In this document: positions 1 through 58,119 of the stretch, piece by piece
How positions within the stretch are numbered: the stretch's first letter is position 1
Layout of the letters: the number at the start of each line of letters is the position of its first letter
IMG/VR virus record: IMGVR_UViG_3300029983_000007
Coordinates: 1-64,000 of that record
Direction: 5' to 3' (one strand)
DNA length: 64,000 nt
The notes under the pieces: model-generated
Told to the model about the DNA's origin: nothing
The model's database searches: none
Seen by the model: only the letters and a program-made list of their open reading frames with translations
Translations under genes and position numbers: made by a program

Positions 1-268
1 CACCACTCTCAGAGCCATCAACTATCTGATCACCAATAACCCAAACAACAACTCCTCCATCTTTAGTTATTCTATATAATTCCTCTACCATTGGTATAAA
101 TGGAAAACTATAACCATCAAACTCATTCTTATCTTTTACAACACCTTTATATGTTCGCAATGAACCATATGGAGGACTTGTGACTGTAAGGTCAACACTA
201 TTATCAGGCATTTTTGACATTATATCAACAGCATCACCACATATTATTTTATTCAAAAAATCATTCAT
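1..268 (-). CDS. N4-cytosine/N6-adenine DNA methyltransferase, 5' part only (runs off the window)
   Basis: Manual translation MNDFLNKIICGDAVDIMSKMPDNSVDLTVTSPPY...ELYRITKDGGVVVWVIGD contains the catalytic SPPY motif; not in the ORF track. Confidence 0.85.
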   Translation of the reverse strand, partial: MNDFLNKIICGDAVDIMSKMPDNSVDLTVTSPPYGSLRTYKGVVKDKNEFDGYSFPFIPMVEELYRITKDGGVVVWVIGDQIVDGSESG

Positions 269-401
269 ATTTATATTTATATTTATATTTATATTTATCT
301 ATCTTTTATATAAATAAAAACTTATTATGTTTAACAAAAAAAAGAGAATACAAGTTAATGTATTCTCTTTTTTTTACTAAAAATTATTATATGTAATTAA
401 A

Positions 402-833
402 TCAACTAAATATACATGCAATTAAAATATCAACAAACCCAAATCCTAAACCAATCAAAAACATTGTACCTGCAAATGAAAAATCACCAACCAAAAATGA
501 TAAAAATGAAATAACAATAAATATTAATGCTATGATAAATATTATAACACCTATCATTGGAATTTTACTTTTACTATTCCAATCAATACCTTCGAGGGTT
601 TTTTCATTTGAAGTTTTTTGATCACCACTAATACCTTCACCAGGATTGAATTTTTTCCCACATTTTAAGCAAGTTATTTTAGTTTTATTACTACCTATAA
701 ATCCTGCTAATAAACCAACACCACCTGTTAATGCTGCACCTGCAGCAGCTTTTCCAACTCCAAATCCTTTTTTTTCTGTTGATAATTGTATTGATCCACA
801 CTTAGGACATCTAATTTGATCATTATTTTTCAT
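402..833 (-). CDS. Zinc-ribbon protein with Gly-rich hydrophobic segment and C-terminal TM helices
   Basis: CPKC and CLKC pairs flank a GKAAAGAALTGGVGLLAG segment; hydrophobic C-terminus. Confidence 0.7.
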   Translation of the reverse strand: MKNNDQIRCPKCGSIQLSTEKKGFGVGKAAAGAALTGGVGLLAGFIGSNKTKITCLKCGKKFNPGEGISGDQKTSNEKTLEGIDWNSKSKIPMIGVIIFIIALIFIVISFLSFLVGDFSFAGTMFLIGLGFGFVDILIACIFS

Positions 834-929
834 ACATAAATAACTTTAACCTATACAAGTGAGGTTTTTAAATTTTATATAAAAATAATAAAATTATTTC
901 ATATATGCAAATATTTTTAATAAAATTAT

Positions 930-1118
930 TTAAAATTCTTCTTCAAATTTTTCACCTCTACTAATCAAATCATCTTTTATAAGTTTTTCAATATACTTTG
1001 ATTTATTTGTGTAACCATTCTCAGTTAAGTAAGATTCTAATTTTTCATTGAGTAATATATTCACTGAAACAGAAAACTCTTTCTTTTTCTCATCATCTGA
1101 TAGTTTTTTCCTAGACAT
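930..1118 (-). CDS. Small ribbon-helix-helix-like DNA-binding protein
   Basis: Beta-strand FSVSVN, a helix, then NKSKYIEKLIKDDL, a typical RHH pattern. Confidence 0.6.
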   Translation of the reverse strand: MSRKKLSDDEKKKEFSVSVNILLNEKLESYLTENGYTNKSKYIEKLIKDDLISRGEKFEEEF

Positions 1119-1241
1119 AAATAATTTTTTATTTTTATATCGTAAAAATCAAAAAAAGATTGAAATATTTTTAAAATAATTGTAAAATAATTGTTTTTGA
1201 CTTTAAAATATTTATATATACTATAAAATAAAGAACATAAC

Positions 1242-1409
1242 ATGAAAAGACAAGTAACAAAAAAATCTATGACAGTTGTAATAGATAAGAATATATATGA
1301 AGCAATTGAACGTTTATTCTGTAACAAATCTAAATATATAAATTGGCTTATATATCAGGACTTATTGAAGAATACTAATGATGAAGAAATTAAAAAATTA
1401 TTATTGTAA
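1242..1409 (+). CDS. Small ribbon-helix-helix-like protein (55 aa), paralog of 930..1118
   Basis: Manual translation MKRQVTKKSMTVVIDKNIYEAIERLFCNKSKYINWLIYQDLLKNTNDEEIKKLLL; preceded by a TATATATA motif. Confidence 0.6.
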   Translation: MKRQVTKKSMTVVIDKNIYEAIERLFCNKSKYINWLIYQDLLKNTNDEEIKKLLL

Positions 1410-1410
1410 A

Positions 1411-2676
1411 ATGAAGAAATTAACTACAGAAGAATTTATACAGAAAGCAAAAAATGTACATGAAGATAAATATGATTATTCATTAGTTGAATATATAAAT
1501 TCATATACTAAGGTGAAAATAATATGTCCTACACACGGCATATTTGAACAAAAACCGAATGGTCATTTAGATAAAAAAGGTTGTTCAGAGTGTAGTGGTA
1601 ATAAGAAATTATCTAAAGATGAATTTATACAAAAATCAAAAAATATACATGGTAATAAATATAATTACAGTTTAGTGAATTATTTTAATTCTAAAACAAA
1701 AGTTAAAATTATATGCGAAAAACATGGCATTTTCGAACAAAATGCAAATAGTCATATTATAGGATATGAATGTTCAAAATGTAGTTATAATGATAGATAT
1801 GTATTTATTGAAAAATCTAAACAGATACATGGTAATAAATATGACTATTCTTTAGTTAATTATACAAATGCATTAAATAAAATAATTATAATATGTCCTG
1901 AACACGGTGAATTTACACAATTACCATATAATCATTTAAGTGGTAATGGTTGTAAAGAATGTTGCACATTAAATAAAAAATTAAAAATTGATGAATTTAT
2001 ACAAAAATCTATGGTTACACATGGAGATAAGTATGATTATTCTTTAGTTAATTATAAAGATAGTAAAACAAAAGTTAAAATTATATGCAAAAAACATGGG
2101 GTATTTGAACAAAAACCAAATGAACATTTAAATGGTAAAGGATGTGCAAGGTGTTTTAATACATTCAAATTAACAACAACTGAATTTATAATTAAATCAA
2201 AGGAAATACATGAAAATAAATACAATTACAGTTTGGTGAATTATGTTAATTCCAAAACAAAGGTTAAAATTATATGTTCTATACATGGCATTTTCGAACA
2301 AATACCTAATTGTCATACAGCACAAAAACAAGGATGCCCGATATGTAAAGAAAGTAAAGGTGAAAGAATTATTAGACAATTTTTATTGAAAAATAATATA
2401 ATTTTTATAACACAGAAAACATTTAGTAAATGTTTATCAGATAAAAATAAAAAGTTAAAATTTGATTTTTATTCAATAGACTATAATATGTGCATAGAAT
2501 ATGATGGTATTCAGCATTTTGAATCTGTTGAATATTGGGGAGGTGAAAAAGATTTCATAAAAAGACAAATGTATGATCAAATAAAAAACGAATATTGTTT
2601 AAAAAACAATATTCGTTTAATACGAATTAGATATGATGAAAATATAGAAGAAATACTAAATAGTTATTTTTTATAA
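1411..2676 (+). CDS. Homing endonuclease: five DUF723-like zinc repeats plus C-terminal PD-(D/E)XK/Vsr-like nuclease
   Basis: 5x YDYSLVxY...KVKIIC..HG.FEQ...H...GC..C; FDFY...IEYDGIQHF; ATG at 1411 follows the upstream stop (ORF track starts at 1378). Confidence 0.85.
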   Translation: MKKLTTEEFIQKAKNVHEDKYDYSLVEYINSYTKVKIICPTHGIFEQKPNGHLDKKGCSECSGNKKLSKDEFIQKSKNIHGNKYNYSLVNYFNSKTKVKIICEKHGIFEQNANSHIIGYECSKCSYNDRYVFIEKSKQIHGNKYDYSLVNYTNALNKIIIICPEHGEFTQLPYNHLSGNGCKECCTLNKKLKIDEFIQKSMVTHGDKYDYSLVNYKDSKTKVKIICKKHGVFEQKPNEHLNGKGCARCFNTFKLTTTEFIIKSKEIHENKYNYSLVNYVNSKTKVKIICSIHGIFEQIPNCHTAQKQGCPICKESKGERIIRQFLLKNNIIFITQKTFSKCLSDKNKKLKFDFYSIDYNMCIEYDGIQHFESVEYWGGEKDFIKRQMYDQIKNEYCLKNNIRLIRIRYDENIEEILNSYFL

Positions 2677-3851
2677 TTATTAATATGTATATATTTCATT
2701 GTTTCAACCATTGTAGGATCACCAATTGCCTTAATTGCATCATCTGATAACTTAACACAAGGAATTCCATTTGCACTAGTAAGTTTAATTACCATGTTCA
2801 TTGGTTTACTTTTTTCACATTTATTACTTTTTTTTGAAAAATCCGATGTCAGAAAAGTTCCAATTCCCATTGAACAACGTATTTTACCTTTACAATAGTC
2901 AACAATTTTTAAAGATCTATCAATATCTAAACCATTGCTATATACAATAATCTTAGTAGTTGGATCAATATTTAACTTTTTATAATGAGCAATCATTTTA
3001 TCAGTATAAGTATATTCTGATCCTGAATCCCAGCGTGTACCATCCCATAATTTTGAGTCTTCCAAAGAGAAATCTTTTAAGAATGAATCAATACCGAATG
3101 TATCTGGAAGCATAGTACCCAAATCTCCACTATAAGTTTGTTGCCATTTTTTCATAACAACTTTATTCGGATGATTCAAACTTTCTAATGCTGCTACACC
3201 TGAAATAATTTCATGAGCCAAAGTTCCTACGCATCTAACATCATGTTTCATAGATAGATACGGATTACTTGTGCCTACAAATACTGAATATTTTTTCAAT
3301 TCTCTAACAACCATATCTTGAACCGAGAAATCTCTCCTACGGCGAGTTCCAAAATCAGCTAATGATGCGCCAGCATCACTTAATGTTTTTCCTTTTGAAT
3401 TAATCAATTCAATTTGTCCATCCATACTCCAATCTTTATCCATCACTTTGAAGTACACTTCAGATATAATTGCCATCAATGGAACTTCCCATAATATTGT
3501 ATCTCTCCAAAAACCACTAATATTAATATTTAGTTCACCATTTTTTTCATGAGTAATATAAACTTGTTCAGGATTAAATCTGTAAGCCGCTAAATATTGA
3601 CGATAAGAAACTGGTAGATATTTAAATTTTTCTTTTAAAAAGTCATATTCTTCATCTGTTAATTTCAATTTAGACATCATATTGATTTGTTTTTTAATCA
3701 TTTTGAATGCTTCATCATTAAAAATCATAGATTTATCACGATTGCTAAATGTATATTCACATTCTACATCAGGGTAGTGCTGAATTACAAAATTTTGCAT
3801 ACTTAACTTGTAGATGTCAGTATCTAAGATACTTTTGATAATTTGCTTCAT
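2664..3851 (-). CDS. pncB: Nicotinate phosphoribosyltransferase
   Basis: SILDTDIYKLSM, DFGTRRR, GTSN, GTLAHE, LPDTFG, GTRWDSG and MVIKL motifs. Confidence 0.92.
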   Translation of the reverse strand: MKQIIKSILDTDIYKLSMQNFVIQHYPDVECEYTFSNRDKSMIFNDEAFKMIKKQINMMSKLKLTDEEYDFLKEKFKYLPVSYRQYLAAYRFNPEQVYITHEKNGELNINISGFWRDTILWEVPLMAIISEVYFKVMDKDWSMDGQIELINSKGKTLSDAGASLADFGTRRRRDFSVQDMVVRELKKYSVFVGTSNPYLSMKHDVRCVGTLAHEIISGVAALESLNHPNKVVMKKWQQTYSGDLGTMLPDTFGIDSFLKDFSLEDSKLWDGTRWDSGSEYTYTDKMIAHYKKLNIDPTTKIIVYSNGLDIDRSLKIVDYCKGKIRCSMGIGTFLTSDFSKKSNKCEKSKPMNMVIKLTSANGIPCVKLSDDAIKAIGDPTMVETMKYIHINNYKK

Positions 3852-3876
3852 TATTTTTAAATTTTTAAATTATTTA

Positions 3877-3906
3877 CAAAGATAATACTATTATTTCAAA
3901 ATACAA
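3877..3906 (-). promoter_or_regulatory. Bacteroidota-type housekeeping sigma promoter for pncB
   Basis: Minus strand TTG-N19-TATCTTTG. Confidence 0.65.
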
Positions 3907-3919
3907 TAAAATATCAGTT

Positions 3920-4543
3920 TTATTTTTTTGAATATGGATTTTTACTTAAATAAGAATTATAATATTTCTTATTACTTGTAACTTCTTCTCCTAACCATTC
4001 TGGTTTTTCATAAGATTCATTTTCACTTTGAAGTTCAACCTCAGCCATTGTTAATCCTTCATTATCTCCATGAAATTCATCAACTTCAAATATATGATTT
4101 CCAACTTGAATATTATAACGAGTCTTATCAATTTTACCATCTCTACACAATAGAAGTAACTCTTTTGCCTCATCAACTAATATTTCTTTTTCAAACTCAT
4201 AACGAGATACACCAGTTTCATTAAGTTTACCTTTAATAGTTATATAGGCTTTATCACTTTTGATACGAATTCTAATAGAAGGATTTTCTGATATATATCC
4301 TTGAATAATATGATATTCATTAACAGCTAATGATTTATATTCACCTTTAACAAGAAATTTTCTTTCAATTTCTTGTGGCATAGGCTTTCTATCCATTTGT
4401 TTTAAAATTTTTTGTTGAATATCAATAATACACAATGTTATCTCATATATTCTATTTTTTATTTCTTCAGTTTGTTCTAGACTTTCAAGATATTTCAATC
4501 TACCATCCATACAATCATATATTTCTTTATACATTCCAATCAT
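3920..4543 (-). CDS. CYTH-domain protein (adenylate cyclase/triphosphatase fold); domain begins at Met55 (4381)
   Basis: EIERKFLV, RIRIK, FEKE, IDKTRY, FEVDEF, AEVE and KYYNSYL motifs. Confidence 0.88.
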   Translation of the reverse strand: MIGMYKEIYDCMDGRLKYLESLEQTEEIKNRIYEITLCIIDIQQKILKQMDRKPMPQEIERKFLVKGEYKSLAVNEYHIIQGYISENPSIRIRIKSDKAYITIKGKLNETGVSRYEFEKEILVDEAKELLLLCRDGKIDKTRYNIQVGNHIFEVDEFHGDNEGLTMAEVELQSENESYEKPEWLGEEVTSNKKYYNSYLSKNPYSKK

Positions 4544-4835
4544 AGTTTTTATTTTTTATTTTATCAAGTTCTTCTAATTTTTCTTTTCTAACTTCTATTA
4601 GTGTTTTTTCTGGTTTTTCAACCCAACTATTTGATTCACTTACTTCCCATCTCCACCTATACAAATCAAATTTTTTCTGTTTGATTTCCACATATCCGTG
4701 CAAATTAAAATCACGACCAATTGGACGCATATACAAATCATAATATTCATTTGGAATATTCTTGATAATCTCTGAATTAAATATTTGTTCACAAACAATA
4801 TGACCACTTGTTGAATTTTTATAATATTTGTTCAT
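4527..4835 (-). CDS. Hypothetical protein with C-terminal RKEKLEEL tag
   Basis: ORF in a tightly overlapping operon. Confidence 0.6.
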   Translation of the reverse strand: MNKYYKNSTSGHIVCEQIFNSEIIKNIPNEYYDLYMRPIGRDFNLHGYVEIKQKKFDLYRWRWEVSESNSWVEKPEKTLIEVRKEKLEELDKIKNKNYDWNV

Positions 4836-5076
4836 TTATTTTTTCTAATTTTTCTTTTCTTATTATTAATAAAGCTTTACTATAATATTGTGCTATATGT
4901 CCTGTATTTTTTTCATATGAATGTTGCATACAGAATACATATTGTGTTATTGGTTCTTCAAAACCTAAAGAGTGAAGCCAATTATCATAATCTTTAAGAA
5001 AAAGATAATATGCAAGTTCATCTAAATAACTACAATTTCCTAAATTCCAATATCCTAAAGATTTATCTATGTTCAT
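4819..5076 (-). CDS. Hypothetical protein with C-terminal RKEKLEKI tag
   Basis: ORF in operon. Confidence 0.6.
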   Translation of the reverse strand: MNIDKSLGYWNLGNCSYLDELAYYLFLKDYDNWLHSLGFEEPITQYVFCMQHSYEKNTGHIAQYYSKALLIIRKEKLEKINEQIL

Positions 5077-5395
5077 TTTTATCTATGATACGATTAATTT
5101 TCATTTTATCAGCAAGAATCCATGCTCCACCTTGGGATTCAGGTCTATCATAAGTTTTTATACCTTCAACTTCAACTTCTACCCATACTCTTATTTCGCC
5201 ACTTAATAGTTTTTCTTTCAAGTGTGGCGCACTTGGAGTGAAACAACAATGCCAACCAAATCTCTCAGCAAATCCATTTGTAGGTATAAACTCAGCATTC
5301 ATCCAAACATTCAATGAATATACTTCTTTAGCATTTATAAACAAACTACCAAGAGTACCATTCTTTCTTTGTTTCATTAATTTATATGCTATCAT
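5063..5395 (-). CDS. Conserved phage hypothetical protein
   Basis: ORF in operon; GFAERFGWHC...PHL...QGGAW pattern. Confidence 0.6.
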   Translation of the reverse strand: MIAYKLMKQRKNGTLGSLFINAKEVYSLNVWMNAEFIPTNGFAERFGWHCCFTPSAPHLKEKLLSGEIRVWVEVEVEGIKTYDRPESQGGAWILADKMKINRIIDKNEHR

Positions 5396-5628
5396 TTTAA
5401 ATTATTTAGTTTTTTAAGTTTTCGTTTTCTATATTCAGATAATGTTTCAAATTCATCTGACATAAATGGTACACATGTTTCAAATCCAACCAATACATAT
5501 AAATCATAACCATGATGATGATTTACATATTTTATTGTATAATTTGAATCAAGAATTAATTCATCATAAACTATTTTATCAGGAGCATAACCAGTATATA
5601 TGACTCTATCACCTTTTTTGCATATCAT
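5392..5628 (-). CDS. Small SH3/KOW-like protein with RKRKLKKL tag
   Basis: KKGDRVIYTG start; paralogous to 5630..5869. Confidence 0.55.
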   Translation of the reverse strand: MICKKGDRVIYTGYAPDKIVYDELILDSNYTIKYVNHHHGYDLYVLVGFETCVPFMSDEFETLSEYRKRKLKKLNNLK

Positions 5629-5629
5629 A

Positions 5630-5869
5630 CTATAATTTTAAGTTTTTTAGTTTTTTAAGTTTTAGTTTTCTATATTCAGATAATTTTTTAAATTCATTGA
5701 AATTAAATGGTATATCAAATCCAAATAATAAATATCCTGAACTATTACGTATACAGCTTATATCTTTCACAATATAAATTGAATTTTTAGTCAACAACCA
5801 ATTCACATGATGATAAAGTTCACCAATATAAACAACTTTATCTCCAGCTTTTGCTAGATTTTTTATCAC
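5630..5869 (-). CDS. Small SH3/KOW-like protein with RKLKLKKL tag
   Basis: KAGDKVVYIG; LSEYRK shared with the neighbouring gene. Confidence 0.55.
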   Translation of the reverse strand: MIKNLAKAGDKVVYIGELYHHVNWLLTKNSIYIVKDISCIRNSSGYLLFGFDIPFNFNEFKKLSEYRKLKLKKLKNLKL

Positions 5870-5879
5870 AATCTAAATC

Positions 5880-6557
5880 TTAAATTACTTCAATTTCATC
5901 AGCAGAATTAACAACTACAATCCTACTACCAACACTATTGACTTTATATTTTTCAACTAAAGAATCTACATAGTTTTTAACATCTTCATCAGAGCCAATA
6001 CCTCGACAGCCACCAAGGTTAAGAATGACATCAAAACCAGCATCAAGCAAATCTTCAACTGTTGAACCTACACAGTAGTTTGTAGCTAATCCTGCTACAA
6101 TAACAGTATCAATATGTTTAGCTATATACCATTCAATAAGTCCTGTTGATATTTTTTTATTTAAGTCATGATAACAACTTGAATAAGGATGTAAATCTGG
6201 TTCAAATCCTTTTGCAACAAAGAAATCATACTCACACATTTTAGGAAGTCCTGCTATAAGTTCAGAACCAAATGTACCTGATATACAATGAGATTTCCAA
6301 GCAATGTCTACATTTTCTCCTTCTACTGGTGAAAATTGAGGTTGGCTATCATTAGCTATCCAAATTGAATTAATAGGATGCATATCTTTAGATACAGTCT
6401 TATATTTCACAAGATTATTTTGCTTATTCAATTCATCTACAATTTCATTACCACCTATTACAGGCAACTCATCTGGACACAATGGAGTAAATCCATTTTG
6501 AGGATCTACATTGTGGCTTGCTGTCAAATTTTTAAATACTGTTATTTTTTTATACAT
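5880..6557 (-). CDS. pncA: Nicotinamidase/pyrazinamidase
   Basis: VDPQNGF (catalytic Asp), D.H, W..HC, KG, and GLATNYCV (catalytic Cys). Confidence 0.9.
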   Translation of the reverse strand: MYKKITVFKNLTASHNVDPQNGFTPLCPDELPVIGGNEIVDELNKQNNLVKYKTVSKDMHPINSIWIANDSQPQFSPVEGENVDIAWKSHCISGTFGSELIAGLPKMCEYDFFVAKGFEPDLHPYSSCYHDLNKKISTGLIEWYIAKHIDTVIVAGLATNYCVGSTVEDLLDAGFDVILNLGGCRGIGSDEDVKNYVDSLVEKYKVNSVGSRIVVVNSADEIEVI

Positions 6558-6561
6558 TGTG

Positions 6562-6900
6562 TTATTTTTTAATTTTTTGTTTATAATATGCTTCTACTTT
6601 TTCAAAATGTTCTGGCCATTTGTCAATTAAATTTGTATTAGAAAAATCAATTCTTATTTTTATAGCTGGTATATTATTTTTTACATAAAATCTTTTTCTT
6701 GTGTCTATTGAATTAACAGTATTTGTAAATAAAGAATTAATATCACAACTATAAATAAATATAAATTCTTCAAATCTTGAAATATCTTTTTTTATATCAT
6801 GTAAATTAACAAAACCTAAGTCATGTTTACCAACTTTTATTTGTTCTTTATAATTGGTTTCAAATATTTTACGATATTCAAGATATTTTTCTAATTTCAT
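6562..6900 (-). CDS. Hypothetical protein
   Basis: ORF track, in operon. Confidence 0.55.
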   Translation of the reverse strand: MKLEKYLEYRKIFETNYKEQIKVGKHDLGFVNLHDIKKDISRFEEFIFIYSCDINSLFTNTVNSIDTRKRFYVKNNIPAIKIRIDFSNTNLIDKWPEHFEKVEAYYKQKIKK

Positions 6901-6901
6901 T

Positions 6902-7075
6902 TTACCAATGTATTTTTATATGTTCTAAATAATCATTATAATTTTCATCTAATATATCAATCATGTTTGCATATCCAATATCTTGAATTGCTATTTTAAT
7001 GCCATCTTTTTCAATTACTTCACCTTTTGTGAGTTTTTTAAAATCTTCTTCGTCTAATAATATATTTTTTGCCAT
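6902..7075 (-). CDS. Hypothetical protein (57 aa)
   Basis: Manual translation MAKNILLDEEDFKKLTKGEVIEKDGIKIAIQDIG...; fills the operon gap. Confidence 0.55.
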   Translation of the reverse strand: MAKNILLDEEDFKKLTKGEVIEKDGIKIAIQDIGYANMIDILDENYNDYLEHIKIHW

Positions 7076-7089
7076 AATTTTTTAATATT

Positions 7090-7428
7090 TTAACACCAAC
7101 CTGATTGTTCATTTATCTTTTTAATTTTTTCATCATCAGTGACTAATGAAACTTCAGAGCCAATTAGATTTCTCAAATCAAAATCTTTCATATTATCAAA
7201 TTTTGTTGCATAATAGCCTACTTCACAAGCATCTACAATCAAGTTTTCACCTTTAATAGAAATGTCTTTTGTTTCAAAGTGATGTGTTTTATTATCAAAA
7301 ATCACATCAATATACTTACCTATTGTTATATTGACATTTGTTTCAAATGTAATATAGGTACCTTTTTTTACTTTTCTTCCTGATGATACTATTACAGCAT
7401 CTATTACTTTACCTAAATAATTTTCCAT
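7090..7428 (-). CDS. Hypothetical protein
   Basis: First gene behind the promoter at 7449-7479. Confidence 0.6.
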   Translation of the reverse strand: MENYLGKVIDAVIVSSGRKVKKGTYITFETNVNITIGKYIDVIFDNKTHHFETKDISIKGENLIVDACEVGYYATKFDNMKDFDLRNLIGSEVSLVTDDEKIKKINEQSGWC

Positions 7429-7448
7429 ATTTTATATTTATTTTTGTA

Positions 7449-7479
7449 CAAAGATATAACTAATTTTTATAATATCAAA
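7449..7479 (-). promoter_or_regulatory. Bacteroidota-type promoter; a divergent -7 box TATATTTG lies at 7520-7527 on +
   Basis: Minus strand TTTG-N19-TATCTTTG. Confidence 0.65.
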
Positions 7480-7547
7480 ATAAATTGAGATAATATTTTT
7501 TTATTTGAATATAATTTATTATATTTGTAATACAAATTAAAAACAAA

Positions 7548-7862
7548 ATGTCAATAGTAATTAAAGAAATAAACAATGAACAATGGCTACACTCTATTGG
7601 TGATATTCCTATAAATTTTACACCATATACGAATAGTAATAGAGGAACTTTTAGTGTATCTATTAGAATTGGTAAAATAAAATATTCTAATTTAATAGTT
7701 GATGAAATATATGACTTAGATTACGATAAAGATTTTATGATAATAGAAAGAATAAAACAAGTAAAACATGAAGATGGACTTATATATGATGATTTAATAT
7801 TTATAAATAAATCTCAATATTTAAAATACACAAGAAAACAAAAACTAAAACAAATACAATGA
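7548..7862 (+). CDS. Hypothetical protein with RKQKLKQI tag
   Basis: ORF track. Confidence 0.55.
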   Translation: MSIVIKEINNEQWLHSIGDIPINFTPYTNSNRGTFSVSIRIGKIKYSNLIVDEIYDLDYDKDFMIIERIKQVKHEDGLIYDDLIFINKSQYLKYTRKQKLKQIQ

Positions 7863-8245
7863 AATTAACGGAAGAACAAATAGATAAAATAAACAGTGAA
7901 TGTACAATATCCGATCAGGGAGTATTCATAGAACCATATGGATGTGATGGCATTAAAGAATTAGTAATTTATATGCGTTGGTCTGAAGGTGGTGCGCAAG
8001 GTGGTAATTGTTGGAATGATGATGAACCTGAAGAATATGATGGAGAAGGTAAACCAAAATTCAAAGTTCTTGATATGGTTTTAGAAATATTAACACCAGG
8101 TATGACATATTTACAATATAAAGCAGTAGAAGAATTGTTGATATCAACAACTAAACATGAATGGGAATATTACGGTAACTATGATAATTATGGTATAGAG
8201 TATATTAAATTAAAGGATTTGATAGATTTATTAGAAACTTTTTAA
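7859..8245 (+). CDS. Conserved phage hypothetical protein
   Basis: ORF track; W..GG..GGNCW motif. Confidence 0.6.
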   Translation: MKLTEEQIDKINSECTISDQGVFIEPYGCDGIKELVIYMRWSEGGAQGGNCWNDDEPEEYDGEGKPKFKVLDMVLEILTPGMTYLQYKAVEELLISTTKHEWEYYGNYDNYGIEYIKLKDLIDLLETF

Positions 8246-8255
8246 ATTTTTTAAT

Positions 8256-8285
8256 AAAAAGAGAGCCTAAGTGCTCTCTTTTTTT
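8256..8285 (+). terminator. Intrinsic terminator
   Basis: AAAAAGAGAGC-ctaagt-GCTCTCTTTTTTT. Confidence 0.75.
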
Positions 8286-8366
8286 ATTTATTTAACCAAA
8301 TATAATTAGTGTATCTTTATATAATTATCTATCTTTGCATTAAATAATCATTAAAAAAATAATTTT

Positions 8367-8789
8367 ATGAAAACAGTTTTTAAAGTAAAATTAATAGACG
8401 GCGGTTGGGTATTTTGGAACCAATTTGGTATTATAATTAGTATTAGTACTGATAATGAAGGAATTCATTTAAATAAATATATTAGTCAATATAAAGTTAT
8501 TACTGAAACAGTATGTCAATTTACTGGGATAACTGATAAAAATAACATTGATATTTTTGAAAATGATTTATTATCAGATGGTAATATAATTTATAAAGTT
8601 GAATGGAATCAACAAAATACCTGTTGGTGGATTAATCCAATAAAAACAATAAAAAAATCTGAAATATCAGAAAAAGATAGTTTCATAACACTAGTACTAA
8701 GCAATGAAAAACTAGGAAATGGGTATTATTCAAGAAGAGATATGGAAGTAATAGGAAATACAATAGATGACTTAAACTTACTATCATAA
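8367..8789 (+). CDS. YopX-family protein
   Basis: TVCQFTGITDKN..DIFENDLL...EVIGN. Confidence 0.75.
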   Translation: MKTVFKVKLIDGGWVFWNQFGIIISISTDNEGIHLNKYISQYKVITETVCQFTGITDKNNIDIFENDLLSDGNIIYKVEWNQQNTCWWINPIKTIKKSEISEKDSFITLVLSNEKLGNGYYSRRDMEVIGNTIDDLNLLS

Positions 8790-8968
8790 ATAATAAGTAA
8801 TCTATTGATTAATAGACACATACAAAACAATTTATATATAATATATATAGTATATATATCATGATCTTGCATGTTTTTATAATTATACATGAAAATCAGG
8901 TGTTTAGTCACCTGATTTTTATTTTTTATTTGATTAAACTTTATTATTTGATTTTTATATCATGAATT

Positions 8969-10186
8969 ATGGCAAAAATAGACATTGAGTATATAAAGAG
9001 TAAGATTTCAGAAGTATTAAAAAATGCTCATTCTGATCCCCGTAAATTTATTATTAAAGATTATAATGATAGAATAAATTTTGCATGTCCAGTATGTGGA
9101 GATTCACATAAAGATCCTAACGCAAAAAGAGCAAATATATATAAGGATAACCCTACATTTATGGTTTGCTTCAATGAAGATTGTAGAGCAAGTGTTACTC
9201 ATTTGTGTCGTGACTTTAATGTAGAAATAGGATTAGAAGAAAAACAAGCATTGTATGATTTTGCTGATTCTCACATGAAGTTTGATAGGAAGAAAGATGT
9301 TTATATTCCTTCGAATTTGAATAAATTGATTGATATAGATGAATTTTCAAACTATGTAAATGAACATTCAGAAAATCAGATTTCAAAATTTAAACCAATA
9401 CAATTTAATTCTGCAGCTTATCAATATTTGAAATATGATAGATTAATTGAAGATTTTGAAAATATTTATGAGTGTGATTATAAGTTAACAGATAGATGGA
9501 CTGAGAAGTGTATTGTTATGCTGAATAAGTCAGGTAAGAAAATGTTAGGAATGCAAATTAGAAACATGAAACCTGGAGATAAAAGATTTTTTAAGATTTT
9601 TAATTTTGAAAAAGTATATTCAATTTTACATCCTGATGAAGTATTAGATGAATTAGAAATGTTATCTTATAATAAGCTTTCTAATTTTTTCAATATATTA
9701 AATGTTGATTGGAATGAACCAGTGACAATATTTGAGGGTATGTTAGATTCATTGTTTATGAATTATGGTAATTCACATAGTAATTCAATTGGAGCAATAG
9801 GGTTGAATAGTATTGATACAGACTTATCATTTTTATTTGATTCTGACTTGGATATTCAATTCTTTTTAGACCAAGATAATGTTGGTATCAGAAAATCTCA
9901 AACTCTCTTAGAACAAGGATATAAGGTTTTTTTGTGGCAAAAATTAGTAGAAGATTTATTAAAAAACAAAAAAGATAAATATGTAGCTAAGAAATATTTA
10001 ATTAAAATTAAAGATTTAAATAAATTGGTACAGGAAATAAAAGATATGGAAAAATTTAAAAAAATAAATTTACAAAAATATTTTTCAAATGATGTTTTTG
10101 ATAAATTATATTTAGATGAAACTTTATATCCTAAACCAGATAAGTTTGGTAAAAAACCATATGATAAAAACAAATATAAAAAATGA
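8969..10186 (+). CDS. DNA primase, T4 gp61-like
   Basis: N-terminal CPVCGDS zinc finger with KRANIY and C..C; TOPRIM IFEGMLDSLF...DQD..G. Confidence 0.88.
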   Translation: MAKIDIEYIKSKISEVLKNAHSDPRKFIIKDYNDRINFACPVCGDSHKDPNAKRANIYKDNPTFMVCFNEDCRASVTHLCRDFNVEIGLEEKQALYDFADSHMKFDRKKDVYIPSNLNKLIDIDEFSNYVNEHSENQISKFKPIQFNSAAYQYLKYDRLIEDFENIYECDYKLTDRWTEKCIVMLNKSGKKMLGMQIRNMKPGDKRFFKIFNFEKVYSILHPDEVLDELEMLSYNKLSNFFNILNVDWNEPVTIFEGMLDSLFMNYGNSHSNSIGAIGLNSIDTDLSFLFDSDLDIQFFLDQDNVGIRKSQTLLEQGYKVFLWQKLVEDLLKNKKDKYVAKKYLIKIKDLNKLVQEIKDMEKFKKINLQKYFSNDVFDKLYLDETLYPKPDKFGKKPYDKNKYKK

Positions 10187-10878
10187 AAAATGATATTGAT
10201 GAATGGAATGATTTTTTAAATGAATTTGACAATTCAATTTTGAATATTTATAAGAAACATGAAAATAGTTTTGATGAATATGGAATTCATGGAAGACGTC
10301 ATATCTCACGTTCTATTGTTTTTTCTGAATTTATGTCAAGATTTTATACAAAGGAATTAGGTAAAGATATAGATTTTAAAGCAATAAGATATGCTGTATC
10401 ATTTCATGATAGTGGTAGGCAAGGTAATGGTATAGATGTATGGGAAAACGATAGTCAAAAAAATTGTTTCAAATATTTAATGAATGATTCTGATTATGAT
10501 AATCATTCTGATTATGATGAAACTAAATGTAAATACATATCTTCATTAATTAGTAAGAATCTAACAAATGATATAAATCATAATATTGTTTATGATTCTG
10601 ATGTTTTAGATATAATGAGACCTTGCTGTGGACATGGTGAGATTGAAAATTTTAGAAGAAGTGAACTTCGTTTTTTAGGACCAAAAGATAATTTTGCAAA
10701 TTGTCATTTATATGATGAAATAAGAGAAGAATTAATTATTGATGCTTGGAAATTGATAGAATACACAGAAGATAATGAAATGCTATTCAACACAAAAGAA
10801 AATAATCAACTTTATTATATGCTTAATATAGTAGATAAAAATAAATTAAATTTTAATATATTACATAAATATTTTTAA
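10183..10878 (+). CDS. HD-domain phosphohydrolase
   Basis: HG..H..R...FHDSGR...D.DVLD. Confidence 0.75.
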   Translation: MKNDIDEWNDFLNEFDNSILNIYKKHENSFDEYGIHGRRHISRSIVFSEFMSRFYTKELGKDIDFKAIRYAVSFHDSGRQGNGIDVWENDSQKNCFKYLMNDSDYDNHSDYDETKCKYISSLISKNLTNDINHNIVYDSDVLDIMRPCCGHGEIENFRRSELRFLGPKDNFANCHLYDEIREELIIDAWKLIEYTEDNEMLFNTKENNQLYYMLNIVDKNKLNFNILHKYF

Positions 10879-10910
10879 TATTTATGTAATATATAAATAT
10901 TGTAAAAATT

Positions 10911-10942
10911 TTTGGTATATACAAATAAAAATATTACATTTG
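10911..10942 (+). promoter_or_regulatory. Bacteroidota-type promoter upstream of infC
   Basis: TTTG-N20-TACATTTG. Confidence 0.7.
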
Positions 10943-10963
10943 CACAAATAAATAATAAAATAA

Positions 10964-11491
10964 ATGGCTAAACAAGAAATTAAAAACAAAATCAATAGAT
11001 TTATTACAAATCAAAGTGTTAGATTAGTTGGAGATAATGTTGAAAATTGTGTATTAGACACTAGAAAGGCACTTAGACTTGCTGATGAAATGGAATTAGA
11101 TTTAGTTGAAATATCATCTAATGATAACGTTTCTATATGTAAAATTGTTGATTATGAAAAATTTCTTTATGACAAAAAGAAAAAAGAAAAAGAACAAAAG
11201 AAAGTTCAAAAACAAAATCAAGCAGAGCTGAAAGAGATTAGAATGACTCCTAATATTGATGAGCATGATTTTAATTTTAAATTAACTCACGCAAAAAACT
11301 TTTTATCTGAAGGTAATAAAGTTTTACTATCAGTGTTTTTTAAAGGAAGAGAGATAGTGTATCAAGATCAAGGTAAAGTTAAACTATTGAAGTTTGTTGA
11401 AGCATTGGATGGTATTGGTATGGCAGAGTCTATGCCAAAATTAGAAGGTAAAAGAATGCAAATGACTATAAAACCAAAAAAGACAAAATAA
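10964..11491 (+). CDS. infC: Translation initiation factor IF-3
   Basis: VRLVG, ELDLVEIS, CKIVDYEKF, KEIRMTPNIDEHDF, FL..GNKV and PKLEGKRM motifs. Confidence 0.95.
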   Translation: MAKQEIKNKINRFITNQSVRLVGDNVENCVLDTRKALRLADEMELDLVEISSNDNVSICKIVDYEKFLYDKKKKEKEQKKVQKQNQAELKEIRMTPNIDEHDFNFKLTHAKNFLSEGNKVLLSVFFKGREIVYQDQGKVKLLKFVEALDGIGMAESMPKLEGKRMQMTIKPKKTK

Positions 11492-12211
11492 ATGGAGAAA
11501 AATGAAATGCTTAATAGCATTATTAAACTTACAAAAGAAACTGGACAAGGTTTAGCATTATCAATTATTAGAGTTGCATCTCCCGAGTATGGGAGATTAG
11601 TTGATGAGCTTATTGAAGAAGGTAAAGTAGATATTCACATCAAACATTATTCTATGTTACCATCTGATGAATGGGTTGTACCTGCAGGTTGTTATTTTGC
11701 CATTAAAGATGATGAAACATATCATCCAGGTGCTTTAATTTTTATGAGAATGTATCTAGAAATTGAAGATTTAGGAGTTGGACTTAAAATATCTAAGGTA
11801 TTAAAAGATGTTCATAGCATGGAAAATTATGCTAAATGGCTAAAAGACAATGAACAAAAACTGATTGATTTAGTTAATATGAAAGAAATTGAATTTATAC
11901 CAAATCAATTAGATGACAATACAAAAAATTGGATAAAAGATAAAACTTGGTATAAAAATAATGATACTGTAGAATCTTGTCTTAATCTGTCAGAAAAAGT
12001 TTCAAAAGAAAATGGAGATAATACACAATTAGATTTGTATGATCAACTTATGCCTTTATATAATACAGACAAAAGTAGATTTGTCAAAGAAATTGAAGAC
12101 TCTAAAATAGATATTGAAAAATTAAAAGAAAATATAAAAAATAGAAATAAGGTAAATAATTGGCTGAAAAGTCAAACACAAACAGATAAAATACAAACAC
12201 TTATAAATTAA
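11492..12211 (+). CDS. Hypothetical protein
   Basis: ORF track, co-operonic with infC. Confidence 0.6.
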   Translation: MEKNEMLNSIIKLTKETGQGLALSIIRVASPEYGRLVDELIEEGKVDIHIKHYSMLPSDEWVVPAGCYFAIKDDETYHPGALIFMRMYLEIEDLGVGLKISKVLKDVHSMENYAKWLKDNEQKLIDLVNMKEIEFIPNQLDDNTKNWIKDKTWYKNNDTVESCLNLSEKVSKENGDNTQLDLYDQLMPLYNTDKSRFVKEIEDSKIDIEKLKENIKNRNKVNNWLKSQTQTDKIQTLIN

Positions 12212-12213
12212 AA

Positions 12214-56106: not shown

Positions 56107-56160
56107 ATATTTTTTATATTTATATATAAATAGTATAAATAATATTAATTTTTTTTTTTG

Positions 56161-56243
56161 TGGGACTAGTGGGGCTCGAACCCACAACCTCCGAAGAGAT
56201 CAGTTTTACAGACTGACATGACTACCTGTGTCATATTAATCCC
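56161..56243 (-). tRNA. tRNA-Tyr(GTA), long variable arm
   Basis: GGGATTA/TAGTCCC; TCAGT-CTGTAAA-ACTGA; TTCGAGC T-loop. Confidence 0.9.
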
Positions 56244-56252
56244 ATATTTTTG

Positions 56253-56377
56253 TGGTAGCAGATGGACTCGAACCACCAACTTCTGAGACATCGGCCCAGC
56301 ACTCTATCCTTCGCTCGTTTCAAATTATTTATTCTAGATTCATAATTATCCCCTTTGTGCTTTTGAGTTACACTACC
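56253..56377 (-). ncRNA. tRNA-like RNA with about 50-nt D-loop insertion, apparent anticodon GAT
   Basis: GGTAGTG/TGCTACC; D-stem ACTC/GAGT around a 60-nt loop; CTGGG-CCGATGT-CTCAG; GGTGG-TTCGAGT-CCATC. Confidence 0.65.
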
Positions 56378-56419
56378 TTTTTTTATTGTAATATTCTTTA
56401 TTTAATTTTTTATTGAGTG

Positions 56420-56498
56420 TACTGCCGAAGGGACTTGAACCCTCATACACCAATTACCTTGTTAATGACTGGATATAAGCCAGTGGGGATACGACAGT
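56420..56498 (-). ncRNA. D-armless tRNA-like RNA, anticodon TAT (Ile)
   Basis: ACTGTCG/CGGCAGT; ACTGG-CTTATAT-CCAGT; GAGGG-TTCAAGT-CCCTT. Confidence 0.7.
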
Positions 56499-56514
56499 GT
56501 ATTTATTTTTGTTG

Positions 56515-56591
56515 TTGGTGAAGTGGGACTTGAACCCACATGTGACCAATTAACCTTTCTACTACTTATCAGGCAGAGGGTATATTCACCA
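56515..56591 (-). ncRNA. D-armless tRNA-like RNA, anticodon GAT (Ile)
   Basis: TGGTGAA/TTCACCA; CTGC-CTGATAA-GTAG; GTGGG-TTCAAGT-CCCAC. Confidence 0.7.
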
Positions 56592-56602
56592 ATGTTATTT
56601 AG

Positions 56603-56676
56603 TAGTCTCGGTGAGACTTGAACTCACGATTTATTGCTTATCAGGCAATTGCTCTAACCAACTGAACTACAAGACT
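56603..56676 (-). tRNA. tRNA-Ile(GAT)
   Basis: Canonical cloverleaf; ATTGC-CTGATAA-GCAAT. Confidence 0.93.
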
Positions 56677-56716
56677 ATTTTAGTTTATTATTTTTTTATT
56701 GGTATGATACTATTTG

Positions 56717-56797
56717 AGCACATTGACAGACTCGAACTGTCGGTGTTTATATCTCGCTTTTGCAGAACGATGCCTTCGCCACTCAGACCAAATGTGC
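56717..56797 (-). tRNA. tRNA-Cys(GCA)
   Basis: GCACATT/AATGTGC; U73 discriminator; loop CTGCAAA; 12-nt variable region. Confidence 0.9.
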
Positions 56798-56806
56798 ATT
56801 TCTATT

Positions 56807-57682: not shown

Positions 57683-57751
57683 AAGTCGAACTTTTTATCA
57701 CTATATATAAAAAGTTCGATATCAATTTTATTAATATTTATTTATTTTTAG

Positions 57752-57838
57752 TACCGTTAGGTGGAATCGAACCACCGCAATCTATAAGACTGAAAGGTTT
57801 ATGAGACCTCCGTAATAACCAACTCTACTCATAACGGT
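57752..57838 (-). tRNA. tRNA with CAT anticodon (elongator Met or Ile2), long variable arm
   Basis: ACCGTTA/TAACGGT; GAGGT-CTCATAA-ACCTT; variable stem AGTC/GATT. Confidence 0.8.
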
Positions 57839-57911
57839 ATATTTATGTTTAAATATATAGTTAATATCATACTAATAGTATGATATTGTTAAATATTTTA
57901 AACTATTTTTG

Positions 57912-57985: not shown

Positions 57986-57990
57986 TTATG

Positions 57991-58078: not shown

Positions 58079-58080
58079 AT

Positions 58081-58117: not shown

Positions 58118-58119
58118 AG

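What the first reader, a model, noticed from the sequence alone, without database searches (positions are those of the whole stretch)
2664..6557. PncA plus PncB: a nicotinate-route NAD rebuilding module
Seen: nicotinamidase and nicotinate PRTase lie within 4 kb on one strand, and pncB has its own host-type promoter. Established: SIR2/TIR defences split NAD into nicotinamide and ADP-ribose, and the described phage NARP1/NARP2 pathways use other enzymes (Adps/Namat; Nampt/Nmnat). Inference: an alternative reconstitution route via nicotinate and NaMN, completed by NadD/NadE from the host or from elsewhere in the genome.
Basis: partly seen in the sequence, partly recalled or inferred. Interest (0 to 1): 0.6.

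Follow-up and report, generated by a model that had tools for sequence, protein, structure and literature searches.

The report
Megaphage nicotinamide-to-NAD salvage genes
A giant peat-soil phage carries working-looking copies of all four enzymes that turn nicotinamide back into NAD (two of them in this stretch), a kind of phage NAD pathway already reported from metagenomes, so this is a solid but not new finding whose anti-defence role is still untested.

Summary
Window 5880-6557(-) encodes a nicotinamidase (PncA), with catalytic Asp-Lys-Cys and metal-binding Asp/His/His in place. Window 2664-3851(-) encodes an ATP-type nicotinate phosphoribosyltransferase (PncB), well above NCBIfam's equivalog cut-off.

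The window is the first 64 kb of a 330 kb record estimated 46% complete, from a peat megaphage that probably infects Bacteroidota. The rest of the record holds NadD and a glutamine-dependent NadE. All four steps from nicotinamide to NAD are therefore phage-encoded. No Nampt, Prs/Adps, PnuC or NadR was found.

The pncA-pncB link recurs in four diverged relatives, under purifying selection. The ORFs between the two genes, CYTH included, are lineage-specific fillers. In one relative pncB was replaced in place by another lineage.

The promoter claim holds only partly. A sigma-70 scan shows no enrichment, but pncB has a Bacteroidota-type TAnnTTTG box at the genome's usual distance from the start codon.

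A 2024 Microbiome paper already described jumbo phages with complete Preiss-Handler pathways and suggested counter-defence. This is a new member of a known kind. Its added points are the PncA entry step and the evolutionary evidence for coupling. Any role against NAD-depleting defences remains inference.

The parts
2664..3851 (-). pncB, an ATP-type nicotinate phosphoribosyltransferase of 395 aa (nicotinate + PRPP + ATP gives NaMN)
   Evidence: TIGR01514 scores 428.7 bits (cut-off 269.55). Pfam finds NAPRTase_N and NAPRTase. The best solved structure is yeast NPT1 (1vlp), E 3.5e-86, and the GTLAHE motif aligns with its GTVAHE. It is the only PF04095 match in the 330 kb record.
5880..6557 (-). 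pncA, a nicotinamidase of 225 aa (nicotinamide gives nicotinate + NH3)
   Evidence: Pfam Isochorismatase scores 43 bits (cut-off 27). PRK11609 scores 79 bits, below its cut-off of 174. The best solved structures are nicotinamidases, led by 2wt9 at E 3.4e-18. D18, K116 and C162, plus D58, H60 and H90, are conserved. At least 261 close relatives exist in metagenomes, several named nicotinamidase/pyrazinamidase by JGI.
3920..4543 (-). CYTH/TTM-family phosphohydrolase of 207 aa, directly upstream of pncB; a lineage-specific insert, not a conserved part of the pair
   Evidence: Pfam CYTH scores 51.8 bits. An EIERK motif is present. The best solved structures are 3typ and 2fbl (NE1496), E about 1e-16. 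It is present only in the window and in L026 (78% identity) and absent from L025, L027 and L028.
4527..5869 (-). Five small ORFs (102, 85, 110, 78 and 79 aa) packed between pncA and CYTH; function unknown; variable filler
   Evidence: None has a Pfam or NCBIfam family. Only the 110 aa ORF matches a PHROG, phrog_12224, of unknown function. None has a homologue among the ORFs between pncA and pncB in L025. Strain variants pile up at 4.9-5.6 kb in peat runs.
6562..7428 (-). Three small ORFs (112, 57 and 112 aa) at the head of the same leftward gene string, directly upstream of pncA
   Evidence: Gaps between them are 1-14 nt. They have no informative family. Relatives have ORFs of the same sizes in the same places in L026.
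3877..3884 (-). Bacteroidota-type -7 promoter box TATCTTTG in the 68-nt gap upstream of pncB (putative internal promoter)
   Evidence: Sequence read. The 10-mer TATCTTTGTA with up to one mismatch occurs 37 times in the window, against 19.4 +/- 4.7 expected. TAnnTTTG shows positional enrichment upstream of genes genome-wide. There is no transcript evidence.
7449..7456 (-). An identical TATCTTTG box in the divergent intergenic region, 28 nt before the first ORF of the leftward string (putative main promoter for the string that includes pncA)
2586..2618 (-). Terminator-like hairpin (15-bp stem followed by a T run), 46 nt downstream of the pncB stop codon
   Evidence: Three terminator-like sites were found in this region, against 0.8 +/- 0.9 in shuffles.
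1378..2676 (+). HNH/homing endonuclease of 432 aa, convergent with pncB and overlapping its 3' end by 13 nt; a neighbour, not part of the pathway
   Evidence: phrog_559 HNH endonuclease, E 8.5e-102. Pfam finds DUF723 and DUF4379 zinc ribbons. It is absent at this position in L026.

Best explanation
The stretch holds the first two enzymes of a complete, phage-encoded, four-step deamidating salvage route from nicotinamide to NAD.
1. PncA turns nicotinamide into nicotinate.
2. PncB turns nicotinate, PRPP and ATP into NaMN.
3. NadD, encoded at 314 kb of the same record, adenylates NaMN to NaAD.
4. A glutamine-dependent NadE, at 126 kb, amidates NaAD to NAD.

PRPP, ATP and glutamine must come from the host.

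The carrier is a roughly 0.7 Mb, 24% G+C megaphage from peat that most probably infects Bacteroidota. The route lets the phage keep or rebuild the NAD pool of the infected cell from free nicotinamide or nicotinate, independently of host enzyme synthesis and of what becomes of the ADP-ribose half.

pncA is probably transcribed with the small ORFs from a promoter near 7450. pncB probably has an additional promoter of its own near 3880. Transcription probably ends at the hairpin at 2586-2618.

Shown here: the identity of the four enzymes, their conserved motifs, the conserved linkage, and purifying selection.
Inferred: enzyme activity, the transcription units, and the benefit. That benefit could be general NAD supply or relief from NAD-depleting defences.
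For: - Enzyme identities.
- Nothing was found for the rival routes in the held 330 kb: no Nampt (29), no Prs domains (13, 75), no PnuC (31) and no NadR-type AAA_28 (76).
- The exact PncA protein occurs on 19 contigs, the longest 711 kb.
- pncA and pncB stay linked in relatives whose PncA is 65-80% identical. They are adjacent in L028, and separated by unrelated small ORFs in L025, L027 and L026.
- dN/dS is 0.12-0.25 for both genes among orthologues.
- In L026, pncB is a different lineage (38% identity) sitting between orthologous CYTH (78%) and pncA (80%). The function was therefore kept through a gene swap.
- The nearest cellular PncA proteins (56-63% identity; Bacteroidales, Prolixibacteraceae, Draconibacterium MAGs) always sit next to a pncB.
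- A second jumbo phage, 97% complete (G001, 425 kb), has pncB with an isochorismatase-like gene 1.6 kb upstream, plus a NadD-like gene and a NadE that is 58% identical to this one.
- Host-type signals: TAnnTTTG boxes, no Shine-Dalgarno sequences, and A-rich leaders.
- Literature: jumbo phages with a complete Preiss-Handler route (PMC11662467). Jumbo phage PA5oct up-regulates the host operon pncA-pncB1-nadE during infection (PMC7318152).
Against: - No enzyme assay, transcript or infection data exist. All sequencing runs that hold the stretch are DNA.
- PncA and NadE score below NCBIfam's equivalog cut-offs: 79 against 174, and 220 against 479.
- The four genes are scattered over three loci, so co-regulation is unproven.
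- The record is only 46% complete. The missing half could hold another, dominant NAD route.
- The route costs three ATP plus PRPP and needs host PRPP. That makes it a slow answer to abrupt NAD collapse.
- The AlphaFold model of PncA was poor (pLDDT 59) and adds nothing.
Confidence: 0.75

Rival explanations
1. Dedicated counter-defence, a fourth NAD reconstitution pathway. The route exists mainly to rebuild NAD after SIR2, TIR, SEFIR or RES effectors split it. It uses the released nicotinamide and ignores the ADP-ribose half, so it would also work where ADPR is modified, as in aRES.
For: - NADase defences release nicotinamide, which is the substrate of PncA.
- NARP1, NARP2 and NARP3 show that phages gain from rebuilding NAD.
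- aRES defeats NARP1 by making ADPR-1''-phosphate. A route that starts from nicotinamide would not care. This last point is my inference.
- The phage carries all four steps even though likely hosts already have pncA and pncB.
- The pair is flanked and interrupted by fast-changing small ORFs, as in anti-defence regions.
Against: - It is untested.
- The route has four steps and needs three ATP plus host PRPP, so it is slower than the known pathways.
- No known anti-defence gene was recognised beside the pair.
- The genes are scattered, not one operon.
- General NAD supply explains the same data.
Confidence: 0.35
2. General metabolic support, as an auxiliary metabolic gene set. The route simply raises NAD supply for a very large phage with a long, demanding infection in nutrient-poor peat, or keeps it going after host gene expression is shut off. 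It has no special link to immunity.
For: - The same genome carries other host-like housekeeping genes: IF3, peptidase M3 and tRNAs, with SmpB just outside the window.
- PMC11662467 finds complete NAD pathways in 174 of 668 gut jumbo phages, including its ten largest.
- PA5oct raises host pncA-pncB1-nadE expression in a laboratory host.
Against: - No NAD-dependent ligase was found in the held half. Other NAD consumers were not surveyed.
- This reading does not explain why the pair is kept so tightly through rearrangement and gene replacement. It is not contradicted by that either.
- It is not exclusive of the counter-defence reading.
Confidence: 0.4
3. The 225 aa protein is not a nicotinamidase but another isochorismatase-family hydrolase. 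On this reading the neighbourhood with pncB carries no pathway meaning.
For: - It scores below the nicotinamidase equivalog cut-off (79 against 174 bits).
- Identity to solved nicotinamidases is low.
- The structure model is poor.
Against: - The top solved matches are all nicotinamidases.
- The metal-binding Asp/His/His set, which (from memory) marks nicotinamidases within the fold, is present and invariant or conservatively substituted in the clade.
- In bacteria and phages alike the gene sits next to pncB.
Confidence: 0.07
4. The CYTH protein and the small ORFs are working parts of the module, for example a triphosphatase that tunes PncB.
For: - CYTH lies directly upstream of pncB in two lineages.
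- It stayed there when pncB itself was swapped.
Against: - It is absent from three of five phage lineages that keep pncA and pncB.
- In L028 the two genes are directly adjacent.
- The interposed ORFs are not homologous between lineages.
Confidence: 0.1
5. The genes are recent passengers from the host, without function in the phage.
For: The nearest cellular PncA proteins are from Bacteroidota, the likely host phylum.
Against: - Composition is fully phage-like, 24% G+C against 40-55% in the bacterial loci.
- Hundreds of diverged copies lie on large phage-like contigs.
- dN/dS is 0.12-0.25.
- Phage PncB is only about 35% identical to the pncB beside the bacterial pncA.
Confidence: 0.03

Closest known systems
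'NAD-jumbo phages' with a complete Preiss-Handler pathway (pncB, nadD, nadE), PMC11662467, Microbiome 2024
   Same: A huge phage that encodes every enzyme of a nicotinate-based NAD route. That paper already proposes the same purpose, NAD supply and possibly countering NAD depletion. That work too is computational only.
   Different: - Here a nicotinamidase is linked to pncB, so the route starts from nicotinamide, the product of NADases. That paper names phage pncA only in passing.
- Here the genes lie at three loci rather than in one cluster like its Kuafu_71.
- The habitat is peat, not gut.
NARP2 (Nampt plus Nmnat) and the KVP40 NadV/NatV salvage pathway
   Same: It starts from nicotinamide and PRPP and ends in NAD. 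It does not use ADP-ribose.
   Different: That route has two amidated steps through NMN, against four deamidated steps through nicotinate, NaMN and NaAD here. No Nampt was found: PF04095 hits only pncB. NARP2 is shown by experiment to counter defence. This route is not.
NARP1 (Adps plus Namat)
   Same: It consumes the nicotinamide released by NADases.
   Different: NARP1 re-joins ADPR-PP and nicotinamide. No Prs-like or Nampt-like gene is present here. NARP1 is blocked by aRES. A route from nicotinamide should not be, by inference.
NARP3 (PnuC plus NadR), PMC13464706
   Same: A phage-encoded NAD rebuilding route built from standard bacterial salvage enzymes.
   Different: NARP3 imports nicotinamide riboside. 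No PnuC or NadR-type kinase domain was found here.
Bacterial pncA-pncB pair (Pnc salvage, e.g. in Bacteroidota; the pncA-pncB1-nadE operon of Pseudomonas)
   Same: The same two enzymes, the same chemistry, and the same habit of lying side by side.
   Different: - The phage genes have phage composition.
- They point the same way rather than divergently.
- They are interrupted by variable small ORFs.
- They appear to have different origins: PncA is about 60% identical to the Bacteroidota proteins but PncB only about 35%.

Membership tests
Nicotinamidase (PncA) within the isochorismatase-like hydrolases | Catalytic triad Asp-Lys-Cys | tested here: met
   D18, K116 and C162 align with the VDxQNGF, KGF and ATxxCV motifs of nicotinamidase 2wt9. 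K116 and C162 are invariant in 12 clade members. D18 is Asp or Glu. The assignment of these motifs to the triad is from memory of the literature.
Nicotinamidase (PncA) within the isochorismatase-like hydrolases | Metal-binding Asp/His/His site | tested here: met
   D58 and H60 (DMHP) and H90 (KSHC) align with DWHP and PKHC of 2wt9. H60 and H90 are invariant. Position 58 is Asp or Glu.
Nicotinamidase (PncA) within the isochorismatase-like hydrolases | Score above the curated family cut-off | tested here: inconclusive
   Pfam Isochorismatase scores 43.2 bits against 27, which is met. The NCBIfam nicotinamidase equivalog PRK11609 scores 79 bits against 174, which is not met.
Nicotinamidase (PncA) within the isochorismatase-like hydrolases | Hydrolyses nicotinamide to nicotinate | not testable with these tools
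   This needs an enzyme assay or genetic complementation.
Nicotinate phosphoribosyltransferase, PncB type (TIGR01514) | Full-length match above the equivalog cut-off, with both domains | tested here: met
   TIGR01514 scores 428.7 bits against 269.55. NAPRTase_N and NAPRTase are both found. Six solved NAPRTases match at E 1e-60 to 1e-86 over residues 3-388.
Nicotinate phosphoribosyltransferase, PncB type (TIGR01514) | Conserved histidine motif of the ATP-coupled enzymes | tested here: met
   GTLAHE in the query aligns with GTVAHE of yeast NPT1. That this histidine is the phosphorylated one is recalled from the literature, not tested.
NaMN adenylyltransferase NadD | Equivalog score, and the HxxH and SxTxxR nucleotidyltransferase motifs | tested here: met
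   For G000 314142-314759(-), TIGR00482 scores 142.1 bits against 112.45. HNTH lies near the N-terminus (read in the translation) and SSTKIR at residue 172 (motif search). The best solved matches are NadD enzymes. Preference for NaMN over NMN was not tested.
Glutamine-dependent NAD synthetase NadE | CN_hydrolase domain fused to an NAD_synthase domain with a PP-loop | tested here: met
   For G000 125887-127653(-), both Pfam domains score above their cut-offs. SGGLDS lies at residue 306, and a CED cysteine at residue 162. The best solved matches are glutamine-dependent NAD+ synthetases 5kha and 4f4h, E about 1e-34.
Glutamine-dependent NAD synthetase NadE | Score above the NCBIfam equivalog cut-off | tested here: not met
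   PRK13981 scores 220 bits against 479. This is a divergent phage lineage, 58% identical to the NadE of phage G001.
'NAD-jumbo phage' as defined in PMC11662467 | Genome over 200 kb that encodes all genes of at least one NAD salvage or Preiss-Handler pathway | tested here: met
   The record is 330 kb and holds pncB, nadD and nadE, plus pncA.
NARP1 | Adps (Prs-like) plus Namat (Nampt-like) | tested here: not met
   PF13793 and PF14572 give no match. PF04095 hits only pncB. Only the held 46% of the genome was searched.
NARP2 | Nampt plus NMN adenylyltransferase | tested here: not met
   No Nampt was found. The single adenylyltransferase is of NadD type.
NARP3 | PnuC transporter plus NadR-like kinase/adenylyltransferase | tested here: not met
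   PF04973 and PF13521 give no match.
Phage counter-defence against NAD depletion (functional class) | Restores NAD and phage yield in cells with NADase defence systems | not testable with these tools
   This needs infection and metabolite experiments. No paper in the library reports it for a PncA/PncB route.

The most novel reading that the evidence does not exclude
The four-gene deamidating route (PncA, PncB, NadD, NadE) is a fourth NAD reconstitution pathway that does not depend on ADP-ribose. With it, megaphages of Bacteroidota would escape SIR2, TIR and RES-type NAD depletion, including aRES, which defeats NARP1. On this reading, selection for the pncA-pncB pairing is strong enough that the pair was assembled from different sources and that pncB was replaced in place in one lineage.
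Probability: 0.3. Interest if true: 0.6.

Novelty: new member of a known kind. Interest (0 to 1): 0.35.

Why it matters
NAD is a central battleground between bacteria and phages, and three phage rebuilding pathways are now proven by experiment. The deamidating route seen here is the commonest bacterial way to recycle nicotinamide, yet it has only been listed in phage metagenome surveys.

A complete gene set with good motifs gives a concrete, clonable candidate for testing whether this route also defeats NAD-depleting defences. So does the clear evolutionary evidence that pncA and pncB are kept together. One question of particular interest is whether the route bypasses defences, such as aRES, that spoil the ADP-ribose half.

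If the route only serves general NAD supply, it is one more example of the metabolic autonomy of megaphages.

Tried and rejected
- Megablast of 2000-8000 against GenBank phages gave no match.
- A sigma-70 promoter scan showed no enrichment over shuffles, so an E. coli-type promoter for pncB is rejected.
- The AlphaFold2 model of PncA, built from a 12-sequence alignment, had mean pLDDT 59. No fold search was run on it.
- The first scan of genome contigs with PncA alone found nothing. The scan with an alignment worked.
- CYTH and the small ORFs were considered as parts of the pathway. This is rejected as the main reading because they are missing or non-homologous in most relatives.
- The aRES paper was checked for a CYTH-type phosphatase. 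Its phosphatase is sought among Macro-domain proteins, and CYTH is not mentioned.
- RNA evidence: no RNA run holds the stretch. Laying four peat DNA runs gave only short contigs. It confirmed identity over 1467-4357 and showed strain variation at 4.9-5.6 kb. Most joints had short sides and were not used.
- The supplementary tables of PMC11662467 are not held, so I could not count how many of its phages carry pncA.
- A cluster look-up of NCBI-sourced homologues gave no taxonomy.
- The large representative protein search and complex prediction were not used, because no claim here rests on them.

Full report
**What the window is.** The window is the first 64 kb of a 330,208 bp IMG/VR virus record. 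The record is linear and CheckV estimates it at 46% complete. G+C is about 24% throughout.
- The PncA protein encoded here occurs unchanged on 19 metagenome contigs, the longest 711 kb. The full genome is therefore probably near 0.7 Mb.
- Runs that hold the stretch are almost all peat metagenomes from many studies. None is RNA.
- A JGI contig (L013/L021) is identical to window 1-11851 and runs on past position 1. The record is therefore a fragment at this end.

**Checking the observation.** ORF 2664-3851(-), 395 aa, is a PncB-type nicotinate phosphoribosyltransferase.
- TIGR01514 scores 428.7 bits against a cut-off of 269.55. Both Pfam domains are found.
- Six solved NAPRTases match over the full length, the best being yeast NPT1 at E 3.5e-86.

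ORF 5880-6557(-), 225 aa, is an isochorismatase-fold protein.
- It passes Pfam's cut-off but not NCBIfam's nicotinamidase equivalog cut-off, 79 bits against 174.
- Its best solved matches are nevertheless all nicotinamidases, led by 2wt9 at E 3.4e-18.
- The motifs that carry the Asp-Lys-Cys triad (D18, K116, C162) and the metal site (D58, H60, H90) are in place.
- These residues are invariant or conservatively substituted (Asp/Glu) across 12 diverged clade members.

Both genes are on the minus strand and 3.9 kb apart end to end. I accept both identifications, pncB firmly and pncA with high confidence.

**The promoter claim.** A sigma-70 consensus scan of 2400-7700 gives 41 sites against 46.8 +/- 7.4 in shuffles. 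The site before pncB matches only 9 of 12 positions. That form of the claim fails.

The genome's own signals are of the Bacteroidota kind.
- Only 10 of 558 called genes have a Shine-Dalgarno-like 4-mer. Leaders are 55-67% A.
- The Bacteroidota -7 box TAnnTTTG lies 15-60 nt upstream, in sense, of 46 of 200 genes with an upstream gap of at least 50 nt. The antisense count is 17 of 200, Fisher p about 1e-4. The peak distance is 30-35 nt.
- pncB has TATCTTTG starting 33 nt before its ATG, in the only sizeable gap (68 nt) of the gene string.
- The identical TATCTTTGTA lies 28 nt before the first ORF of the string, at 7456-7447.
- A strong hairpin with a T run follows pncB at 2618-2586.

The likely layout is a leftward unit from about 7450, containing pncA and CYTH, with an extra promoter for pncB and a terminator after it. 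All of this rests on motifs, with no transcript data.

**The rest of the pathway.**
- The same record encodes a NadD at 314142-314759(-). TIGR00482 scores 142 bits against 112. HNTH and SSTKIR motifs are present, and the best solved matches are NaMN adenylyltransferases.
- It also encodes a 588 aa glutamine-dependent NadE at 125887-127653(-). It has CN_hydrolase plus NAD_synthase domains and an SGGLDS PP-loop. The best solved matches are glutamine-dependent NAD+ synthetases at E about 1e-34. It scores below the NCBIfam equivalog cut-off.
- Searches of the 330 kb for other routes were blank. No second PF04095 protein (so no Nampt or Namat), no Prs domains, no PnuC, no NadR-type AAA_28 domain and no NAD-dependent ligase were found. 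There is one NUDIX protein at 246.8 kb.
- The held half of the genome thus carries exactly the four-step deamidating route: nicotinamide, nicotinate, NaMN, NaAD, NAD. PRPP, ATP and glutamine are left to the host.
- The genes lie at three separate loci. NadE sits oddly among giant TIG, collagen and Fib_succ_major proteins.

**Evidence from relatives.** Look-ups of PncA relatives on long AT-rich contigs show pncB downstream on the same strand every time.
- L028 (PncA 69% identical): directly adjacent.
- L025 (68%): after five small ORFs.
- L027 (75%): after three small ORFs, an OmpA-like gene and one more ORF.
- L026 (80%): after six small ORFs plus CYTH.

Flanking genes differ between the lineages.

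The ORFs between the pair are not homologous between the window and L025. CYTH occurs only in the window and L026. The conserved unit is therefore the pair, and the rest is variable filler.

dN/dS among orthologues is 0.12-0.25 for both genes, with dS near saturation.

In L026, pncA (80%) and CYTH (78%) are orthologous to the window's genes, but pncB is only 38% identical. L025, L027 and L028 have 63-64% identical PncB. This looks like a replacement in place by another pncB lineage.

At least two dozen clusters in the PncA and PncB hit lists share the same longest-contig length. That suggests many more contigs carry both genes. This is indirect evidence.

The nearest cellular PncA proteins (56-63% identity) are in MAGs of Bacteroidales, Prolixibacteraceae and Draconibacterium. 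There pncA always lies beside a pncB, mostly divergently. That pncB is only about 35% identical to the phage PncB. The phage pair may therefore have been assembled from different sources, or PncB may have diverged much faster.

A separate jumbo phage, 97% complete (G001, 425 kb), also carries several of these genes:
- a pncB 40% identical to this one;
- an isochorismatase-like gene 1.6 kb upstream of it;
- a NadD-like gene;
- a NadE 58% identical to this one.

Another phage (L016) has a tight nadE-pncB-nadD-NUDIX cluster.

**How it most likely works.** PncA deamidates free nicotinamide. PncB commits nicotinate to NaMN, using PRPP and ATP. NadD and NadE finish the job. This is standard Pnc/Preiss-Handler chemistry, which is established knowledge.

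Carrying all four enzymes makes NAD recycling in the infected cell independent of host protein synthesis. Because it starts from nicotinamide, it can in principle recover NAD split by SIR2, TIR or RES effectors whatever becomes of the ADP-ribose part. That includes aRES, which defeats NARP1 by making ADPR-1''-phosphate. This last step is my inference.

The data cannot say whether the selected benefit is counter-defence or general NAD supply. Jumbo phage PA5oct raises the host's pncA-pncB1-nadE operon during infection. So jumbo phages do gain from this route, even in a laboratory host.

**Comparison with what is known.**
- NARP1, NARP2 and NARP3 use other enzymes. Their papers do not mention PncA or PncB.
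- PMC11662467 (Microbiome 2024) already reports that 174 of 668 gut jumbo phages encode complete salvage or Preiss-Handler pathways. It shows a pncB-nadD-nadE cluster, mentions phage pncA in passing, and proposes counter-defence without a test.
- Later genome papers repeat the idea.
- The library holds no experimental test of a phage PncA/PncB route and no 'NARP4' of this kind.

The finding is a new member of a known kind. What this analysis adds:
- the nicotinamidase entry step, linked to pncB;
- the full four-gene set in one genome;
- conserved pairing under purifying selection, with variable inserts and an in-place pncB swap;
- a probable Bacteroidota host.

**Limits.**
- Only 46% of the genome was searchable.
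- No RNA data exist. The reads tool returned short DNA contigs only. These confirm identity over 1467-4357 in independent peat runs and show strain variation at 4.9-5.6 kb.
- The structure model of PncA was too poor to use.

Noticed in passing
window 1378-2676 (+): An HNH/homing endonuclease (phrog_559, E 8.5e-102) is convergent with pncB and overlaps its 3' end by 13 nt. The terminator-like hairpin at 2586-2618 lies inside it. It is absent from relative L026, the lineage whose pncB is a different one. Homing-driven exchange of the flanking gene is a possible cause, but was not tested.
   Followed up: partly
L026:10995-12197 compared with window 2664-3851: pncB appears to have been replaced in place. 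PncB is 38% identical between the two phages, while the neighbouring CYTH (78%) and pncA (80%) are orthologous.
   Followed up: partly
window 8367-14013 (+): Host-like genes lie next to the module: a YopX protein (8367-8789), a translation initiation factor IF3 homologue (10964-11491) and a peptidase M3 (12214-14013). These are precomputed Pfam hits for the identical genes in L021.
   Followed up: no
window 56160-58286 (-): A cluster of seven tRNA genes: Tyr, Ile, Cys, Met, Asn x2 and Glu.
   Followed up: no
whole record G000 (558 called genes): Expression signals are of the Bacteroidota type. There are almost no Shine-Dalgarno motifs (10 of 558 genes), leaders are A-rich, and TAnnTTTG boxes lie about 30 nt before start codons. 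The phage is 24% G+C, while the bacterial loci with the nearest PncA are 40-55%.
   Followed up: partly
G000 119001-135000 (L040): nadE lies between very large proteins that look like tail-fibre or surface proteins. These are a glycosyltransferase (820 aa), a Fib_succ_major protein (877 aa), a TIG-domain protein (676 aa) and a collagen-repeat protein (1498 aa). This is an odd place for a metabolic gene.
   Followed up: no
G000 306835-308295 (L042:835-2295, +): A TnpB-like ORF (OrfB_IS605 plus the Cas12f1-like TNB domain) sits inside the phage genome.
   Followed up: no
L021:16290-20678 (beyond window position 1): A JGI contig identical to the window's start continues leftward past position 1. 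It carries an N6_N4 DNA methyltransferase, a DNA_pol_B_exo2 protein, a nucleoside 2-deoxyribosyltransferase-like protein, an ASCH protein and SmpB.
   Followed up: no
window 4900-5600: In four peat runs, variant contigs with many substitutions and higher summed depth pile up over the small ORFs between pncA and CYTH. By contrast, 1467-4357 is identical. This is a local hot spot of strain diversity.
   Followed up: no
L038, L039 (genome contigs): Short AT-rich contigs (21% and 33% G+C) with PncA fragments 75-81% identical to the phage's are binned in a Muribaculaceae MAG and a Methanomicrobiales MAG. They are probably mis-binned phage fragments.
   Followed up: no
ENA contig of P0116 (no DNA held): In a Bacteroidota-like bacterial contig (SusC/SusD, Por_Secre_tail), the pncB beside pncA is called as two ORFs of 268 and 120 aa. 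It may be frameshifted.
   Followed up: no
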